From Vitrella brassicaformis CCMP3155 (Eukaryota > Protista > Chromerida): 64,000 nucleotides of DNA. The position numbers and the translations under genes are program-made. Below the pieces are notes generated by a model. The model did not search any database and had not been told where the DNA came from. It saw nothing but the letters and a program-made list of their open reading frames with translations. Positions 7,575 to 14,060 of the stretch are shown piece after piece; within the stretch, counting starts at the first letter, position 1; each line of letters begins with the position of its first letter. Where the stretch lies: assembly GCA_001179505.1 (NCBI GenBank), contig CDMY01000878.1, forward strand, positions 124,001 to 188,000, given 5' to 3'.

Positions 7575-8638
7575 CTAGGCCACTCTGCTCTCCATTCGAT
7601 TGAGCACCTGCTCTGTCTCACCACCCTCACCCTCATCATCAACCGCCACACGGCCGTCCAGGCTCTTGCGCACTTTGGATTGCGCACTGGGGGAAGACAG
7701 AAGCGGCTCAGAAGGGCCATATGGCGTCGACCGAGAGAGCTGGCTGTCGCCCATGTTTTTTGCCAAGGGGGAGGTGAAGAAGTCGGCCGTGTTGTCTCGG
7801 GAGTGGCGCTGCGCATGGTGGTCTGCCCCTCCTTGGTAGCTGCCGTCCATTACTGTGATCCCTGGTGGAAAGAGAGAGACATACGGAGATGAGAATGTGT
7901 CTGCACTGAAGGTGGTTGCGTGATTCATCGACCTGTCCTGACGGATATCTCGCTCATCCGCTTGATTCGATTCAGGTCGGTCATGACCCTCGTCACGATG
8001 TCGCTGCTCAGCTGTCGGTTTTCGCGCGTATCCCGCAGGACATGCGTCTTGAGCTTGTGTCCCAGCAGCGTCCCTTCCTCACCAGGTGTGACGGTCCACC
8101 GCCGGTCGGACACAGACACAATGTCGTCCCTCTCCGTCTTTATCTTTGACACGAAATACTCCAGCCCGTCCTCACTCTCATCATCTCCCCCCACAGACAA
8201 TGTCATGCCCAGTGCTTTCGGTGGGGCCGACTTGCGTCTCGGCGCCACCGACGAGATTGAGCTGAGGGGTATGAGGGGGATGCCACCCTCGATGCCGTCG
8301 AAGAGGTCCTCGGCCATCTGCCGCTCCGACAGCTTGCAGATGAGCCAGTCGTCCGCCAGGGGCTTCTCCTTGGTTTCTTTCTGGACAGGCAGGGGCAGTG
8401 GCACAGGGAGGGGGAGCGACTCCAGGAGGTTTGATGGCGTGGGCGGAGCTGGATTGGCGGGCGTCTGGGGCGTGAGGGGAGGCGTCGGTAACTTCTCGGC
8501 GGCAAGTGCAGGGTCGGTGACCACCGAAGGGAGCTGAGCTTCGGCCGGCACTGCTGGGTCCGGGGGAGGCAGGTGTGCCGGGGCGGCCTCTCTGCTGGCT
8601 TCCTTCTTCTTCTCTGCGGCCTTCTTGCGCCGCCACAT
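7575..8638 (-). CDS. Hypothetical Pro/Lys-rich low-complexity protein (2 exons; intron 7932-7862)
   Basis: ORF 7925-8671 joins ORF 7575-7928 in frame through a canonical GT-AG intron (ACAG|GTCGAT...CCACCAG|GGATC). No recognisable domain; start MWRRKK is assumed. Confidence 0.5.
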
Positions 8639-8731
8639 CAGAAAAACCCCGGCGGACCCGCGCGAAATCACAGATCAGATCGCGGGGCCACCGCGCGCGT
8701 TGGACCACCCGGCAGACTTGAGGTTTGAGGG

Positions 8732-11700
8732 ATGGGCTACTGGGACAAGGTCAACGTGTGTTACAGTGAGGAGACTACTGCCGCAGATGGTGCCTTTGTG
8801 TTGTTCTCCGCCGTTCTCATTGCCCTTATGCAAAGTCAGTAACAGCAGCAGGGAAGGAGGCCATGCCTTTCGCACATTGCTGTGGGTCACGCAGTGGGCT
8901 TTGGGTTTGTGGAGCTGGCATGCGTCAGCACAAAGAGTCGAGTCAACATTTTTCTCAAGGTAAGCAAGCTGCACCCCATGGCGCATGGCTTCTCCCCTGA
9001 ATCATCCTTGCATGGTTGGGTATTGTCCTGTCGGGTCTGTGCAGAACCTGATGGACTTTCTTCTTTCGGGCTTCGGCTGGTGGTATACATTGTGGCCTGA
9101 TGACGAGGGAGGGCATTTCGGCTGTTTCATCTTTGTGTATGTTTTCGTCCGTGTAGGATTTTTGGCTATGCGATAGCAAGTGGCAGTAAGCTGTCGCTGG
9201 AATGGGAGGACCCGCTCGGCTTCTTCTTTGGCCTCACCTTTGCCGGTCACCACATGCGATCTCTACAGAACACGTCATGCAGTGACTCTCCGTTCCTCTG
9301 CAGCGACCGCGGGAACAATCGATAGTGGTGCACTCGCTGAAAGGTATCAATGATCTGCTGCACAATGGCTCACTTCATCTGCTGAACACATCTGTCATGA
9401 CTGTCTTCCGTCATGATCTCTCAGGATCAACTTCAACTCTTATCAGCTGCTGACCTTTTGTATTGCTTCCTTCATCTATGCGGTGCACAGACAAGACAAG
9501 GCGGCACTGTTTCCTGCATGTGTCCAATCTGTCTGCATGTGTATGGTCACAGGGAGCAGCCTGGGCTGTCTGGCACGACGATGGTGAGAAGAATGATCAG
9601 GCTCTCTGCTGCAGCAAATTATCCTCTCGTGTCTCCAGGCATCTTGTCCAAAATGGGCTACACAGATTTTGCTGGGGGAGCCACGATACACATGCTCGGC
9701 GCCGCCAGCGCTCTCGCATCCTGCGCTTTACTCGGCCCCCGGATCGGTCGCTTCACCGATTATAAGCCGTGGACACATCCCAACTGGCTGCGAGTAATCC
9801 GGTAGGTCTACAAATGCTGCCAGACGCGGCAGACAATGCTCTTCGATTTTGGCCGCTCGTGCGTTTAGTCGTTCGCAGGATCCTGAAGACTACCTCGCTC
9901 CCCCGACTGGGACGGAGATCGTGCCCGTCAACGACGCTGTGTCTCTGATGATCGGCACGGTAAGCTTAAACACACAGCGGTTAACAATCGACGCCGTGTC
10001 ACGGCTGCCCTGTGTGAATCCCTCAACGACGCTCAGCTGTACCTGACCATCTGCTGGTACGGGTAAGCTGACACACACACACACACACACACACACCGCC
10101 TCAACCAACACATTCATCAAGTCTCCCTCATCTGCAGATTCAATTGCGGGTCAGTCGGGCGCATCAGCGGCGGAGCGGACATCGTTGTGGGCCATGTGGC
10201 TGTGACGACCACCCTCGGCGCCTTTGGGGGAGGGATCCCATCAGTCATCTACGGCCGGATGTTTAATCAAAACGCGAATGTGAACCCTGGAGACGTGAGC
10301 ATGGCAGACAGAAAGGGAGAAACAACCGATGGACGAATGCATTGCAGGTGTGTTTGGGCATCCTCAGTGGGCTGGTTAGCGTCACGGCGGGAGCGCCCTA
10401 CTTCACCACAACAATGTCGTTTATCATCGGCACCATCGGCAGCGGACTCGCCTTCCTCACCGTCCGACTGCTGGAAGCATTCCACATCGATGATGTCGTG
10501 CTCGCAATACCGGTACACCTGCATGCATCAGTCTGCCTGCACCCGCACGAGATGTCAAGCGTCATCAGGTTCATGGCACTGCGGGGTTCTGGGGCGCGGT
10601 GGCGATCGGCTTCTTCGGCGTCGAATGGAAGGAGTGCGACGAGGTGAGAATGCAGAAGATGCATCTCCTTCATCTTCGTCCGAGTCTTGTCTCGCCCACA
10701 GCTGGTGCTGGTTGGTCTCTTCTACGCCTCCGCCAATGACCTGCCGACCGCATGGAAGACGCTCAGGGTGCAGCTCGCCGGTCAGAAATGACACCGGACG
10801 AGCGGAGACATAAGTCATGATATCTGTGTGTGTCCTTGGTTGGTCCCAATATCCATCAGGCACGCTGCTTATATTTGTGTGGGCCGCGGGAACGACGTGG
10901 CTTGTGTGTGCGCTATTTAACCAGTTCAAGCCGACGAGGCTCCGCATAGACCTGGAAGAGGAGCTAGAAGGCCTCGATGCTGCACACGGTCAGGCTGAGA
11001 CCTCTGTGCGTCGCGAATACGAGAGGAGGTCTCGTCTCCCTTGTTCTTTCTTCCCATATGCGTGTGTGCAGGCGAGAATGCCTCGGCTGTGCGCGATAAT
11101 GTCATCGACATGCTTATCCACAGCATTGCAGAGATCGCGCAACATTGGGATCTTTCCTGGATGGCTCAAGGCAAGAGCAGCACCTCCAAGAGCAAGCAGC
11201 GGCTGCACCGGGCCACGTCGCGGACCATGGAAGACCTACTCAGCGCCTTTGCCAAAGCATCCCAATGCATTCGCGACCAGAACTTCAGACATCGGATGGA
11301 GGAGGAAGGAGGTAAGGCACTCAGGAGAGTCGAGAGACACCTCCCACGGACCAACTATTGTCTTCTGTGATGCCTCTCGGTCTGCCGGTCAGACACGGAG
11401 CACTTCCCCGTTTTCCTGCCCATAGAATCCTTCAAAGTCCGGATCATCCAAGCTACACTCGGCCGCGCAGCCGCAGACCTAGATGACGATGAGGGGGATG
11501 ACGACGCAGACACAGAGAAGGAGAAGACGACCGCTGCGAGTGCCAGCAAGGGCAAGAAGATGCCTTCTTTCCTCAACCCATATGTGGAGGTGCAGTTTGT
11601 GCGGGCCAACAGGCGGACGGGGCAGTTCGTCAGCCAAATGCAGATGGGGAGACGGCCGCGATGCACTAGTACAAAACGGCTGACCGATCAGCCGACATGG

Positions 11701-13499
11701 AATGAAGTAATCGTCCACACACACACGGAGACACAGAGACCCGGACAGGAAACGACGCTGCTCTGGTTTGTTGTTATCAGACATTGGAGTTCCACAATAT
11801 GGGAGGCGAGATAGCCGATGATCTGTACTTCTTGCTGACGGTGTGGGACTCTGGCATGGTCCTGCGGCCCGGCGGCCGCATCCTGGGGCAAATCGCCTTC
11901 CCATGCAGCCCATCGGCGTGGCGCAAACGCCAAGTGGAGCGCAAGAAGTCGCAGAACATGGACGACGCCCTCAGCGGACTGCACCAACGATCGACCATCA
12001 AATCAGCGGTGTGCAGAATCAGAAAGGTCACCCAGCAAAGTGTTTTCTCTGTGGCCTTTTTGTGTGCAGGTGCATTACCAGCGGTTACACCAGGAGGCGC
12101 GCTTCAAGGTCATCAGGAAAAGGGACGCAACCACAGCAGCCCAGGACGAGAAGGCCTCCAGCCAAGACGACGACATGAGTTTTTCACTCCAGCCGTCGTC
12201 CCGCCAGAACAGCCGCACCCTGGACGACACTGACGCCCCCTTGAAGCGATGTCTCGAAATGCTGCCGTGCTTCCGCAAAGGAGGAGACTACCAGGAAAGG
12301 CCACAGACGCGAGGGATGTTGAAGTTCCAGGTCATGTTTGAACCTGACGAGCACACGGAGAAAATTGCCGAAGAGGACGAAAGGCAGCGCGCCGACCGTC
12401 TGGCAATGATGAACAGAGCGAGCGGCGAGCAGTCAGAGGCTGCCGTAGAGGGTTTGCTGGGTGCGGCCCCCTCGGCTGACACGCTTCGCAACAGGAAGGT
12501 GAGCATTGCGGACGGCCTGGTGACAGAAGCCTTTCCCCTGAGTAAGGGGAGCTATCGATCGGGCAAAGGCGCGGCAGAGATGGTGCGGATGGCTTCGCTT
12601 CTCCGTGACAGTGAAGACCACGGTACTGTCCCGACCGGGGTCCTCGTGAAGTGGACGGACAGTAATGGTATCCCAGCGGACTTGAGAAGCCTCTCTGGCG
12701 CATACGAGATGGCGGGGCGGCAGGACGGCAGGCCGTACTATGCGAAGCCGTCTCGGGACGGCAGCATGACTTGGTATCTGTTCTGGTCTGTGGCGAGGGA
12801 GATGTGGCTGCTGGCCGACGTGGTGGGGTCGACCAGCCCTGTTGCCTTCTCGTCAAGGGAGGAGAGAGACGACGACGAAGAGGGGCAGCCGGCGGCTCTC
12901 TCTCCTGACAAAGCCGCGCAGCCCTGGTTCCTACATGGGGTTGGCCATTAGATGTCAAACAACCGGTGAGACACGAGTCTTCTTGTCGTGTATCTGTGGA
13001 TACCAGGTTTGTATGGAACGGCCACAGCGGATGGGACGAAAACACGGCATTCTCTGTCCTTCCTGACCCTGGTACACACGACCCCCCCAACAAACACAAC
13101 ACATTCCTTGCCTGTGTGTCTCTGCGTGTCTCCCTTGTCCTGCCTGCAGGGGTCCCCCGCTCTCGATTCGAGGTCCCTCTCCCAGGTGCGGTCCCCTGGG
13201 GCACTTACAGACCGCGGCCGCCCAGTGTGTCTAGCCTCCCTCCCCCGCCCCTGCCCGGCGGGATGAAGCTCAACCAAGAGCAGAAGATTCAGGTCACGGC
13301 CAACCAGTTCTCCCAGACGACGGCCATGCTGAGGAAGGGGGCGCGGGGGACTGTTGAGACAGAAAGGGAGAGGGGCAATTTGTCGCGTGAGGGGAGTCAG
13401 AGTCTGCAGCAGATGGTGGCACAGGCCATCAGTGGGGATGCGGGGAATGGGTGTGAGACACCGCACTCGGCTGCCTCACAGGCGCCTTCACCGAGATGA
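8732..13499 (+). CDS. AMT: Ammonium transporter (Amt/Mep) with a long cytosolic tail containing a C2 domain and a Trp-rich module
   Basis: Spliced protein: LMQMGFGFVEL..KSRVNIFLKNLMD, FGLTFA, ATAGTIDSGALAER, DFAGGATIH, CWYGFNCGS, LSGLVSVTAG, DDVVLAIPVHG, LRIDLEEELEGLDAAHGE. It continues in frame across canonical introns into FKVRIIQA..NPYVEVQF..QPTWNETLEF..FLLTVWDS..LGQIAFP..GMLKFQVMFEP. The last two exons (13007-13499) depend on the donor choice near 12927-12966. Confidence 0.9.
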
Positions 13500-13760
13500 A
13501 TGGAGGTTTATTGTTCTTGGTCCACATGGTGTCGTGCTGGCCGGGTGGGGGATGCAGTGTCGAGTTTGTTTTGGTTTGGTTTGGCCATACGTATGTGTGG
13601 GCAGTGCAACGCAGTGGACTGTGTGTGTGATGTCTGCATGGCACGAACGGGCGAAGCCCGTCTACGTGCGGCCTCTGCGTGCTGCAAGGTGTGTGTCCAT
13701 GATGCATGCGTGTGTGCGAAGACGTGAATGCGTTCGCGTTTTGTGTGGTCGATTTTTGGC

Positions 13761-14060
13761 NNNNNNNNNNNNNNNNNNNNNNNNNNNNNNNNNNNNNNNN
13801 NNNNNNNNNNNNNNNNNNNNNNNNNNNNNNNNNNNNNNNNNNNNNNNNNNNNNNNNNNNNNNNNNNNNNNNNNNNNNNNNNNNNNNNNNNNNNNNNNNNN
13901 NNNNNNNNNNNNNNNNNNNNNNNNNNNNNNNNNNNNNNNNNNNNNNNNNNNNNNNNNNNNNNNNNNNNNNNNNNNNNNNNNNNNNNNNNNNNNNNNNNNN
14001 NNNNNNNNNNNNNNNNNNNNNNNNNNNNNNNNNNNNNNNNNNNNNNNNNNNNNNNNNNNN
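13761..14060. other. Assembly gap (300 N) followed by a 21-nt poly-C run
   Basis: N run seen directly; C21 at 14061-14081. Confidence 0.99.

What the first reader, a model, noticed from the sequence alone, without database searches (positions are those of the whole stretch)
8732..12330. Ammonium transporter fused in frame to a C2 domain
Seen: the Amt core keeps the twin His (DFAGGATIH, IPVH), the Phe gate equivalents (FGLTFA, WYGFN), W148-like VW and S219-like GS. It ends with the usual LR..EE..GLD..HGE tail, then runs on for roughly 600-700 aa across canonical introns (phases checked by hand at 10990/11070, 11312/11425, 11707/11780, 12008/12069). The tail has a helical linker and a C2 pattern (FKVRIIQA, NPYVEVQF, PTWNETLEF, LTVWDS, LGQIAF, GMLKFQVMFEP) with long inserted loops. 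Typical Ca-binding Asp positions are partly replaced (NPY for DPY; WDSG). Established: Amt fusions to His kinases and other signalling domains exist in bacteria. I know of no described Amt-C2 fusion. Inference: a lipid- or Ca-linked transceptor, or a transporter tethered to membrane contact sites.
Basis: partly seen in the sequence, partly recalled or inferred. Interest (0 to 1): 0.8.

Follow-up and report, generated by a model that had tools for sequence, protein, structure and literature searches.

The report
Ammonium transporter with C2-domain tail
The alga Vitrella brassicaformis makes one 1120-residue protein that joins a complete ammonium transporter, of the class that includes known bacterial ammonium sensors, to a long cytosolic tail carrying a lipid-binding-type C2 domain and an unnamed beta domain. 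Public databases hold this layout but no paper I could find describes it.

Summary
An RNA-derived contig splices all 20 GT..AG introns into one ORF, from ATG 8732 to TGA 13497-13499 (1120 aa). That ORF is identical to the public Vitrella brassicaformis record CEM36130.1 / A0A0G4GYW5, which UniRef auto-names "C2 domain-containing protein".

- **Amt core (aa 1-436):** it scores 239 bits against Pfam PF00909. The twin His, Phe gate, Trp, Ser and Asp are all kept. Intron 15 splits the conserved HG|ENA motif at the end of the core.
- **Closest solved relatives:** these are the bacterial ammonium sensors Sd-Amt1 and Ks-Amt5, and all ten Sd-Amt1 N1/N2-site residues are identical.
- **C2 domain (aa ~526-790):** it passes Pfam's C2 cut-off only on the joined protein (23.7-27.7 bits; cut-off 22). 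It has two long loop inserts and lacks most calcium-binding aspartates.
two further introns, an unnamed ~107-aa beta domain (aa 897-1003) and a Pro/Ser-rich end.
- **Conservation:** a 94%-identical metagenome relative keeps the tail ORF intact, and the C2 core is its most conserved part.

The function is untested. First-stage notes report three more Amt-C2 genes elsewhere in this genome, which I did not check. I found no paper on this layout. I rate it a new variant of a known kind, of moderate interest.

The parts
8732..13499 (+). Whole coding region: 21 exons and 20 GT..AG introns of 53-85 nt, giving a 1120-aa ORF. Exons: 8732-8834, 8895-8959, 9045-9082, 9157-9245, 9304-9343, 9425-9482, 9553-9583, 9639-9801, 9869-9959, 10037-10062, 10138-10294, 10348-10512, 10569-10643, 10702-10780, 10860-10988, 11072-11311, 11393-11706, 11781-12008, 12070-12926, 13007-13071, 13150-13499 (stop TGA 13497-13499).
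   Evidence: The spliced RNA contig of run X4 shows all joints. The ORF was rebuilt from those joints. It is identical to public protein P0014 = CEM36130.1. The NCBI annotation has a 1120-aa product at the same coordinates.
8732..10987 (+). Amt/Mep-type ammonium transporter core, aa 1-436 (exons 1-15). All hydrophobic segments lie within aa 22-413.
   Evidence: PF00909 scores 239 bits, E 9e-71. The pore residues are conserved against AmtB. The closest solved structures are Sd-Amt1 (E 6e-36) and Ks-Amt5 (E 1.6e-27).
10937..11085 (+). Conserved cytosolic C-terminal regulatory motif of Amt proteins (aa 420-441, L-R-x-D-x-E-E-E-x-E-G-L-D-x-x-H-G|E-N-A), split by intron 15 (10989-11071).
   Evidence: It aligns to the AmtB C-terminus EGLDVNSHGENAY only after splicing. 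The joint 10988/11072 is seen in RNA with 129 nt and 239 nt on its two sides.
10988..11418 (+). Linker 1, aa 437-525. No family hit and no hydrophobic segment.
   Evidence: Pfam gave nothing.
11419..12348 (+). Divergent C2 domain, aa ~526-790, spread over exons 17-19. The Pfam-aligned core is aa 573-665 (11560-11912). A 35-aa acidic insert sits in loop 1 (aa 541-575, 11464-11568). A ~113-aa insert lies between strands 7 and 8 (aa 666-778, 11913-12312). The proposed first strand is FKVRIIQA and the last is LKFQVMFE.
   Evidence: PF00168 scores 23.7 bits on the whole protein and 27.3-27.7 bits on sub-ranges (cut-off 22). Single exons gave only 13.5-17.2 bits. 27 of 30 nearest ESM-Atlas feature clusters are C2. 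The top-50 Foldseek PDB hits are all C2 domains, and dysferlin C2A aligns over model residues 14-277 at Z 7.1, but the model has pLDDT 40. In relative L001 the core is 98.9% identical against 89-94% for the rest of the tail.
12349..12666 (+). Linker 2, aa 791-896, rich in Ala, Glu and Arg. No family hit.
12667..13067 (+). Unnamed all-beta domain, aa 897-1003, split by intron 19 (12927-13006). Conserved motifs are G-x-Y...G-R-P-Y-Y...Y-L-F-W...W...P...W. It occurs as tandem copies in unrelated eukaryotic proteins.
   Evidence: A phmmer search of exon 19 found 8 proteins that match only this stretch, 2-4 times each. The domain was delineated with jackhmmer and aligned as A1. The AlphaFold2 model of a homologous copy has pLDDT 86.8 and pTM 0.81 with 9 strands. 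It has no Pfam family and no clear PDB relative. It matches ESM-Atlas protist clusters at TM 0.70-0.78.
13068..13499 (+). Pro/Ser/Gly-rich C-terminal end, aa 1004-1120, plus the stop codon.
   Evidence: Composition is. The reading frame and stop are conserved in relative L001.

Best explanation
**Shown.** Window 8732-13499 is one expressed gene of Vitrella brassicaformis (CEM36130.1). Its product starts with a complete 11-helix-type Amt ammonium transporter. The transporter keeps its normal cytosolic C-terminal regulatory motif. That motif then runs on into a 684-aa soluble tail made of linker 1, a divergent C2 domain with two long loop inserts, linker 2, an unnamed beta domain and a Pro/Ser-rich end.

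**Inferred.**
- Amt proteins are trimers with the C-terminus inside the cell, so three tails should hang under the membrane next to the regulatory C-terminal regions.
- The C2 domain lacks most Ca2+ ligands but has a basic cluster in strands 3-4.
- I therefore think the tail most likely binds acidic lipids, or a partner protein, on the cytosolic face without needing calcium.
- In this way it would control where a working AMT1-like transporter sits, or how open it is, as phosphorylation of the C-terminal region does in plant AMT1 and yeast Mep2.
For: - **One transcript and one ORF:**
- **Pore and gate residues intact, transporter-type C-terminal motif restored by splicing:**
- **Tail is soluble:** no hydrophobic segment after aa 413.
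- **C2 domain:** it is above Pfam's cut-off, and feature and fold look-alikes are all C2.
- **Purifying selection on the tail:** against the 94%-identical relative L001, mismatch rates at codon positions 1/2/3 are 0.022/0.033/0.107 (chi-square p 4e-11). Exon indels are 3, 6 and 3 nt, while intron indels are 2, 2 and 1 nt.
- **C2 core is the most conserved tail segment:** 98.9% identity.
- **Ca2+ ligands:** replacement of the ligand positions (NPY; D-S-G) and the basic run R-R-P-R..K-R before P-T-W-N-E are read directly from the sequence.
Against: - No functional data of any kind exist: transport, lipid binding and location are all untested.
- The C2 score is modest.
- The only fold model of the C2 region has pLDDT 40.
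- C2 domains can also be protein-binding modules.
- The Amt core carries the full N1/N2 ligand set of true ammonium receptors, which fits a sensor as well as a transporter.
- Leu-290 stands at the cytosolic exit position, where Af-Amt1 has Ser and Sd-Amt1 has the exit-narrowing Asn (PMC11152129). Its effect is unknown.
- The role of the beta domain is unknown.
Confidence: 0.55

Rival explanations
1. Ammonium receptor (transceptor). As in bacterial Sd-Amt1 and Ks-Amt5, NH4+ would bind at the internal N1/N2 sites and move the switch lysine. The signal would pass through the C-terminal region to the tail. The output would be a change in membrane or partner binding by the C2 and beta domains, not an enzyme activity. 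Net transport would be small or secondary.
For: - Sd-Amt1 and Ks-Amt5 are the closest solved structures (E 6e-36 and 1.6e-27, against 3e-21 for Mep2 and about 1e-15 for AmtB).
- Sd-Amt1 residues Q22, F25, E29, K44, N45, D48, F49, T104, S107 and Y119 are all identical here, as Q34, F37, E41, K56, N57, D60, F61, T103, S106 and Y118 (read against PMC11152129).
- Like those receptors, the protein has a module fused to its C-terminus.
- A bulky Leu-290 sits at the exit position that Asn-269 narrows in Sd-Amt1.
Against: - The same signature class (cluster 2) contains plant AMT1 proteins that have been characterised as NH4+ transporters (PMC11152129).
- The tail has no enzymatic or known signalling output domain.
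- The transporter-type C-terminal motif EGLD..HGENA is kept. The local alignment to Sd-Amt1 ended before it, at query residue 421.
- The published signature spacing (x54-60) is not met: it is x41 here, because the TM2-TM3 loop is shorter.
Confidence: 0.2
2. Membrane-contact tether. The transporter sits in one membrane, and its C2 domain holds a second membrane in trans (for example the cortical alveoli that lie under the alveolate plasma membrane), in the manner of extended synaptotagmins or tricalbins.
For: The tail contains two long linkers (89 and 106 aa) that could span a gap. As a trimer the protein would present three C2 domains. C2 domains are the membrane-binding parts of the known tethers; that point rests on my own knowledge.
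Against: No SMP domain or other lipid-transfer or tether domain was found. There is one C2 domain per chain, not an array. There are no location data. Nothing distinguishes binding in trans from binding in cis.
Confidence: 0.1
3. Artefact: two neighbouring genes joined by mistake, or a tail whose C2 resemblance is chance.
For: Single exons give only sub-threshold C2 scores of 13.5-17.2 bits. The precomputed Pfam list for the annotated product shows only PF00909. An assembled contig is not a single sequenced molecule.
Against: - One RNA contig crosses all 20 introns with no break in frame.
- The junction intron lies inside the conserved HGENA motif.
- The independent NCBI gene model is identical.
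- The tail frame is under purifying selection in a relative.
- The C2 domain is above the gathering threshold on the joined protein.
- The feature search and the fold search agree on C2.
Confidence: 0.03

Closest known systems
Sd-Amt1 (Shewanella denitrificans; PDB 8QJ3/8QJ4/8QPF) and Ks-Amt5 (Kuenenia; 6EU6): bacterial ammonium receptors with an Amt module fused at the C-terminus to a GGDEF or histidine-kinase transducer
   Same: They are the closest solved Amt cores. The N1/N2 ligand set, the switch Lys and the Tyr are identical. Both have a C-terminal soluble module after the 11-helix core.
   Different: The fused module here is a C2 domain plus an unnamed beta domain, with no enzyme and no HAMP. 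The transporter-type EGLD..HGENA motif is retained. The organism is a eukaryote, and the TM2-TM3 loop is 13 aa shorter.
Plant AMT1 and fungal Mep2 transporters, regulated through their cytosolic C-terminal region
   Same: They belong to the same eukaryotic Amt/Mep family. AMT1 proteins fall in the same N1/N2 'cluster 2' (PMC11152129). A conserved C-terminal region follows the last helix.
   Different: Those proteins end 30-60 aa after the motif and are controlled by phosphorylation (my own knowledge). Here the position two residues before the His of HGE is Ala, and 680 further residues follow.
Ca2+-independent C2 domains, such as RIM2 C2A (1V27/2BWQ) and the PI3K and DOCK C2 domains
   Same: RIM2 C2A and rabphilin C2 domains were the best, though non-significant, PDB sequence hits. 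PI3K-gamma, DOCK and dysferlin C2 domains were the best structural alignments. Acidic Ca2+ ligands are missing.
   Different: The loop inserts are very long (35 and about 113 aa). The domain is attached to a polytopic transporter, not to a soluble signalling protein.
Extended synaptotagmins / tricalbins
   Same: They are membrane-anchored proteins with cytosolic C2 domains.
   Different: This protein has no SMP domain, only one C2 domain, and an anchor that is itself a solute transporter.

Membership tests
Amt/Mep/Rh ammonium transporters (PF00909) | Profile match above the curated threshold | tested here: met
   239.1 bits against a 23.2-bit cut-off, E 9e-71.
Amt/Mep/Rh ammonium transporters (PF00909) | Twin-His pore, Phe gate, and the Trp/Ser recruitment site with its conserved Asp | tested here: met
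   H159/H344, F97/F236, W138, S240 and D151 align to AmtB H168/H318, F107/F215, W148, S219 and D160.
Amt/Mep/Rh ammonium transporters (PF00909) | About 11 membrane helices followed by a cytosolic C-terminal motif | tested here: met
   Hydrophobic segments lie only in aa 22-413. The EGLD..HGENA motif aligns to the AmtB end. The helix count was not determined independently.
Amt/Mep/Rh ammonium transporters (PF00909) | Actual NH4+/NH3 transport | not testable with these tools
   This needs yeast complementation or electrophysiology.
Sensor Amt / AmR class (N1/N2 signature, PMC11152129) | N1/N2 ligand residues Q, E, N, D, F/T, T, S/T | tested here: met
   All are identical to Sd-Amt1 in the HMMER alignment, including the switch K56 and Y118.
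Sensor Amt / AmR class (N1/N2 signature, PMC11152129) | Published signature spacing Q-x6-E-x15-N-x2-D-F/T-x54-60-T-x2-S/T | tested here: not met
   The first half matches exactly at aa 34-61. The spacer to T103 is 41 residues, not 54-60.
Sensor Amt / AmR class (N1/N2 signature, PMC11152129) | Fused transducer with a signalling output (HK, GGDEF) | tested here: not met
   The tail gives only a C2 hit in Pfam.
Sensor Amt / AmR class (N1/N2 signature, PMC11152129) | Binds NH4+ without completing translocation | not testable with these tools
   This needs electrophysiology.
C2 domain (PF00168) | Profile match above the curated threshold | tested here: met
   23.7 bits on the whole protein and 27.3-27.7 bits on aa 515-800 and 575-700, against a 22-bit cut-off. 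Single exons are below the cut-off.
C2 domain (PF00168) | Eight-stranded beta sandwich | tested here: inconclusive
   The single-sequence AlphaFold2 model has pLDDT 40.3. Even so, its top-50 Foldseek hits are all C2 domains, and dysferlin C2A aligns over 105 residues at Z 7.1.
C2 domain (PF00168) | Five acidic Ca2+ ligands in loops 1 and 3 (Ca2+-dependent subclass) | tested here: not met
   The sequence has N-P-Y where D-P-Y is expected, and W-D-S-G...P-G-G where D-x-D...D is expected (read; aligned to RIM2).
C2 domain (PF00168) | Phospholipid binding | not testable with these tools
   This needs liposome or PIP-strip assays.
Extended-synaptotagmin-type tethers | SMP lipid-transfer domain plus several C2 domains | tested here: not met
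   There is no SMP hit, and only one C2 domain.

The most novel reading that the evidence does not exclude
This would be a eukaryotic ammonium transceptor. Occupancy of the conserved N1/N2 sensing sites would be passed through the C-terminal region to a calcium-independent C2 domain and an unnamed beta domain. Ammonium availability would then switch the tail's binding to membrane lipids or partners. That would be a receptor output of a kind not known for any Amt protein.
Probability: 0.15. Interest if true: 0.8.

Novelty: new variant of a known kind. Interest (0 to 1): 0.5.

Why it matters
Amt proteins fused to signalling modules are the only proven ammonium receptors, and all characterised examples are bacterial. 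Here a photosynthetic relative of the apicomplexan parasites, associated with corals, has an Amt core with the full receptor-type ligand set. That core is joined to a membrane-binding-type domain, and the gene is expressed and under purifying selection.

If the tail controls gating, location or signalling, it would show a new way for eukaryotes to couple nitrogen uptake to membrane lipids. It also gives a simple test system: the core with and without the tail, in yeast.

The finding also puts a first context on an unnamed beta domain that is widespread in protists.

Tried and rejected
**Searches and tests that led nowhere**
- Exon-by-exon searches of the tail gave only sub-threshold C2 scores or nothing: Pfam, PDB sequences and ESM-Atlas on exon 18.
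- Two JGI metagenome scans, with exon 19 and with the C2 core, found no relative.
- The exhaustive representative search with exon 19 returned only a 305-aa fragment from a metagenome relative plus beta-domain proteins. It did not return the full-length record, which was later shown to be in the collection.
- A guess that the upstream minus-strand ORF is an intronless gene failed.
- An alignment query led by P0002 did not retrieve the record. The same alignment led by exon 19 did.
- AlphaFold2 on aa 515-800 without an alignment gave pLDDT 40. I use it only as weak support.
- The beta domain has no convincing PDB relative. The best Foldseek hit had E 0.1 (lipocalins), and the best VIA-align hit was Z 6.8 on a DNMT5 segment, which is within the noise range.
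- Literature searches for an Amt-C2 fusion, for Vitrella Amt genes and for the accession numbers found nothing relevant. One term was a locus tag I had guessed, and it carries no weight.

**Readings I rejected**
- A gene-model artefact.
- A Ca2+-sensor C2 domain.
- A plastid-targeted transporter: only 19 residues precede the first helix, so there is no presequence.

**How I handled the joined model**
- I built the spliced model only inside the sandbox, from window coordinates. It was never typed in or sent to a search tool.
- All whole-protein searches used the public record P0014, which one search showed to be identical to the model.


Full report
**What is there**

Six-frame translation and Pfam scans of single stop-free pieces showed Amt-family matches on several short exons between 9400 and 11000. 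They also showed a weak C2 match near 11560-11800, at 17.2 bits and below the 22-bit cut-off. The gene is made of many short exons, so the exon structure had to come from RNA.

**RNA evidence**

Five of the six public runs listed hold the stretch. When laid on window 8500-13400, runs X1 and X2 gave unspliced genomic contigs.

Run X4 gave a single 3643-nt contig (depth 51.6) that skips every intron at GT..AG. It runs from about 8718 to beyond 13400. It includes the joint 10988/11072 between the last Amt exon and the first tail exon, with 129 nt and 239 nt of exon on the two sides.

Exon 19 ends at 12926, a 65-nt exon follows (13007-13071), and a last exon starts at 13150.

**Gene model**

Joining the exons by coordinates in the sandbox gave one ORF of 1120 codons, from ATG 8732 to TGA 13497-13499. 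It has 20 introns of 53-85 nt, all GT..AG.

**Public record**

A neighbouring exon led to an annotated Vitrella brassicaformis CCMP3155 protein. From there I reached the NCBI contig CDMY01000878.1, where a gene at exactly these coordinates has a 1120-residue product.

An alignment query led by exon 19 then returned that protein, P0014. Its accessions are CEM36130.1, UniRef100_A0A0G4GYW5 and EukProt EP00390_P021089, and UniRef names it 'C2 domain-containing protein'. It is identical to my model over all 1120 residues.

The joined model itself was never sent to any search tool. Every whole-protein search below used P0014.

**The transporter part**

P0014 scores 239 bits on PF00909.

Against E. 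coli AmtB (30% identity) the recruitment Trp and Ser, the conserved Asp, both pore His and the inner Phe and Trp are all kept. By ungapped reading of the F-x3-F...GALAER stretch, both Phe-gate residues are kept too. The AmtB end EGLDVNSHGENAY matches EGLDAAHG|ENAS, with intron 15 falling between G and E. So splicing restores a conserved motif, which is strong independent support for the junction.

Hydrophobic segments occur only in aa 22-413. By the known Amt topology (N-terminus outside, C-terminus inside) the tail is cytosolic. Only 19 residues precede the first helix, so there is no organelle presequence.

**Which kind of Amt**

The closest solved structures, in order:
- Sd-Amt1 (8QJ3/8QJ4/8QPF), E 6e-36
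- Ks-Amt5 (6EU6), E 1.6e-27
- Mep2, E 3e-21
- AmtB, about E 1e-15

The PDB codes for Sd-Amt1 were confirmed in PMC11152129. That paper defines an N1/N2 sensing site and a signature for a 'cluster 2' of Amt proteins. The cluster holds the two bacterial receptors, Drosophila Amt and plant AMT1 transporters.

In the HMMER alignment every named Sd-Amt1 residue is identical here. Q22, F25, E29, K44, N45, D48, F49, T104, S107 and Y119 correspond to Q34, F37, E41, K56, N57, D60, F61, T103, S106 and Y118.

The literal signature fails only on spacing, 41 residues against 54-60, because the TM2-TM3 loop is 13 residues shorter. The exit position (Asn-269 in Sd-Amt1, Ser-251 in Af-Amt1) is Leu-290 here.

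The core is therefore of the class that can sense ammonium. That class also includes proteins characterised as NH4+ transporters.

**The C2 domain**

- **Pfam:** on the joined protein PF00168 passes the cut-off, at 23.7 bits for the whole protein (aa 573-665 = profile positions 18-91). It scores 27.3 and 27.7 bits on aa 515-800 and 575-700.
- **PDB sequences:** the best hits, though not significant, are all C2 domains (RIM2 C2A, rabphilin).
- **Language-model features:** features of aa 515-800 place 27 of the 30 nearest named clusters in PF00168, at score 0.93.
- **Fold model:** AlphaFold2 without an alignment gave a poor model (pLDDT 40.3). Its strands still fall where the C2 strands are expected. 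Its 50 best Foldseek hits are all C2 domains, best E 2.6e-3. A second-look alignment covers the whole dysferlin C2A domain with model residues 14-277 (Z 7.1, rmsd 3.4 Å, 105 residues), and PI3K-gamma C2 reaches Z 8.2.

I therefore place the sandwich at aa ~526-790. A 35-aa acidic insert sits in loop 1, and a ~113-aa insert lies before the last strand.

Of the usual acidic Ca2+ ligands, the D of D-P-Y is N, and loop 3 reads D-S-G...P-G-G. Calcium binding of the classical kind is therefore unlikely. A basic run (R-R-P-R...K-R) precedes P-T-W-N-E, where PIP2-binding C2 domains carry their lysines. That last comparison is from my own knowledge and was not tested.

**The rest of the tail**

An exhaustive phmmer search with exon 19 found a 93%-identical fragment and eight proteins that match only aa ~891-960, each 2-4 times.

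Iterated search among them defined a 107-130-aa module. In this protein it spans aa 897-1003 and crosses intron 19 (alignment A1).

The findings on this module are:
- The model of a homologous copy is confident: pLDDT 86.8, pTM 0.81, nine strands.
- It has no Pfam family.
- It has no convincing PDB relative.
- It matches ESM-Atlas clusters of hypothetical proteins at TM 0.70-0.78. Their recorded members are mostly haptophyte, apicomplexan, ciliate and diatom, with one viral cluster. Some carry EF-hand, TSP1 or EGF domains.

Its function is unknown. Linker 1 (aa 437-525), linker 2 (aa 791-896) and the Pro/Ser-rich end (aa 1004-1120) gave no hits.

**Selection**

The 93%-identical fragment comes from an ENA metagenome contig (ERZ893784, locus L001). 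It aligns to window 11459-13653 at 93.9% nucleotide identity.

- Mismatch rates at codon positions 1/2/3 are 0.022/0.033/0.107 (chi-square p 4e-11).
- Indels inside exons are 3, 6 and 3 nt. Indels inside introns are 2, 2 and 1 nt.
- Spliced in the same way, the relative's tail ORF is intact to the same stop.
- The C2 core is 98.9% identical and its last strand 100%, against 89-94% for inserts, linkers, beta domain and end (Fisher p about 0.007).

The tail is therefore a maintained coding sequence, and the C2 core is its most constrained part. L001 does not reach the Amt exons, so it says nothing about whether the fusion is conserved in the relative.

**How it probably works**

Shown: the protein has a transporter core with every pore residue, a retained regulatory C-terminal motif, and a soluble tail with a C2 domain and a beta domain.

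Inferred:
- In the trimer, three tails lie under the membrane beside the C-terminal regions that gate neighbouring subunits in AMT1 and AmtB.
- A calcium-independent C2 domain would dock on acidic lipids or on a partner, and so set the transporter's place or activity. I give this 0.55.
- The receptor reading gets 0.2. The N1/N2 set and Leu-290 speak for it. The lack of any output enzyme, and the membership of AMT1 transporters in the same class, speak against it.
- A trans-membrane tether gets 0.1, and an artefact 0.03.

**Novelty**

The record exists and is auto-labelled as C2-containing, so the architecture is implicit in public databases. I found no paper that describes it or any Amt-C2 fusion. 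PMC11152129 only states that eukaryotic Amt proteins with fused modules exist.

First-stage notes list three further Amt-C2 genes on other pieces of this genome. I could not reach those pieces, so that remains an unchecked lead.

I rate this a new variant of a known kind, with interest 0.5.

Noticed in passing
window 12667-13067 (aa 897-1003), and proteins P0002-P0009, P0011-P0013: This is an unnamed all-beta domain of about 110-130 aa (motifs G-x-Y, G-[KR]-P-Y-Y, Y-L-F-W, W, P, W). It occurs in tandem arrays in unrelated eukaryotic proteins. Some are Cys-rich and look secreted, one carries subtilase plus Calx-beta, and one carries TIR. It has no Pfam family and no clear PDB fold relative, but has good ESM-Atlas structural matches to clusters whose recorded members are mostly protists. 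It is a candidate new domain family.
   Followed up: partly
window 7575-8638 (-) and 8732 (+): The annotated upstream gene (330 aa, no Pfam hit) lies head-to-head with the Amt gene, and the two start codons are only 94 nt apart. The RNA contig for the Amt gene starts about 14 nt before its ATG. This suggests a very short shared promoter region.
   Followed up: no
L001 (ENA ERZ893784 contig k147_5759166), aligned to window 11459-13653: A metagenome holds a close relative of Vitrella brassicaformis CCMP3155 (93.9% nucleotide identity over 2.2 kb, same intron positions). A second Vitrella-like lineage therefore exists in environmental data.
   Followed up: partly
window 10072-10097; 13761-14060: A (CA)n microsatellite lies inside intron 10, and reads appeared cut there in the read-laying step. 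An assembly gap of N, followed by a poly-C run, lies just after the 3' UTR, where the RNA contig also ends.
   Followed up: no
tool behaviour: The full-length record P0014 is in the protein collection, yet the exhaustive 50%-representative search with its largest exon did not return it; only the 305-aa fragment P0001 appeared. A blank from that search is therefore not proof that a protein is absent.
   Followed up: yes
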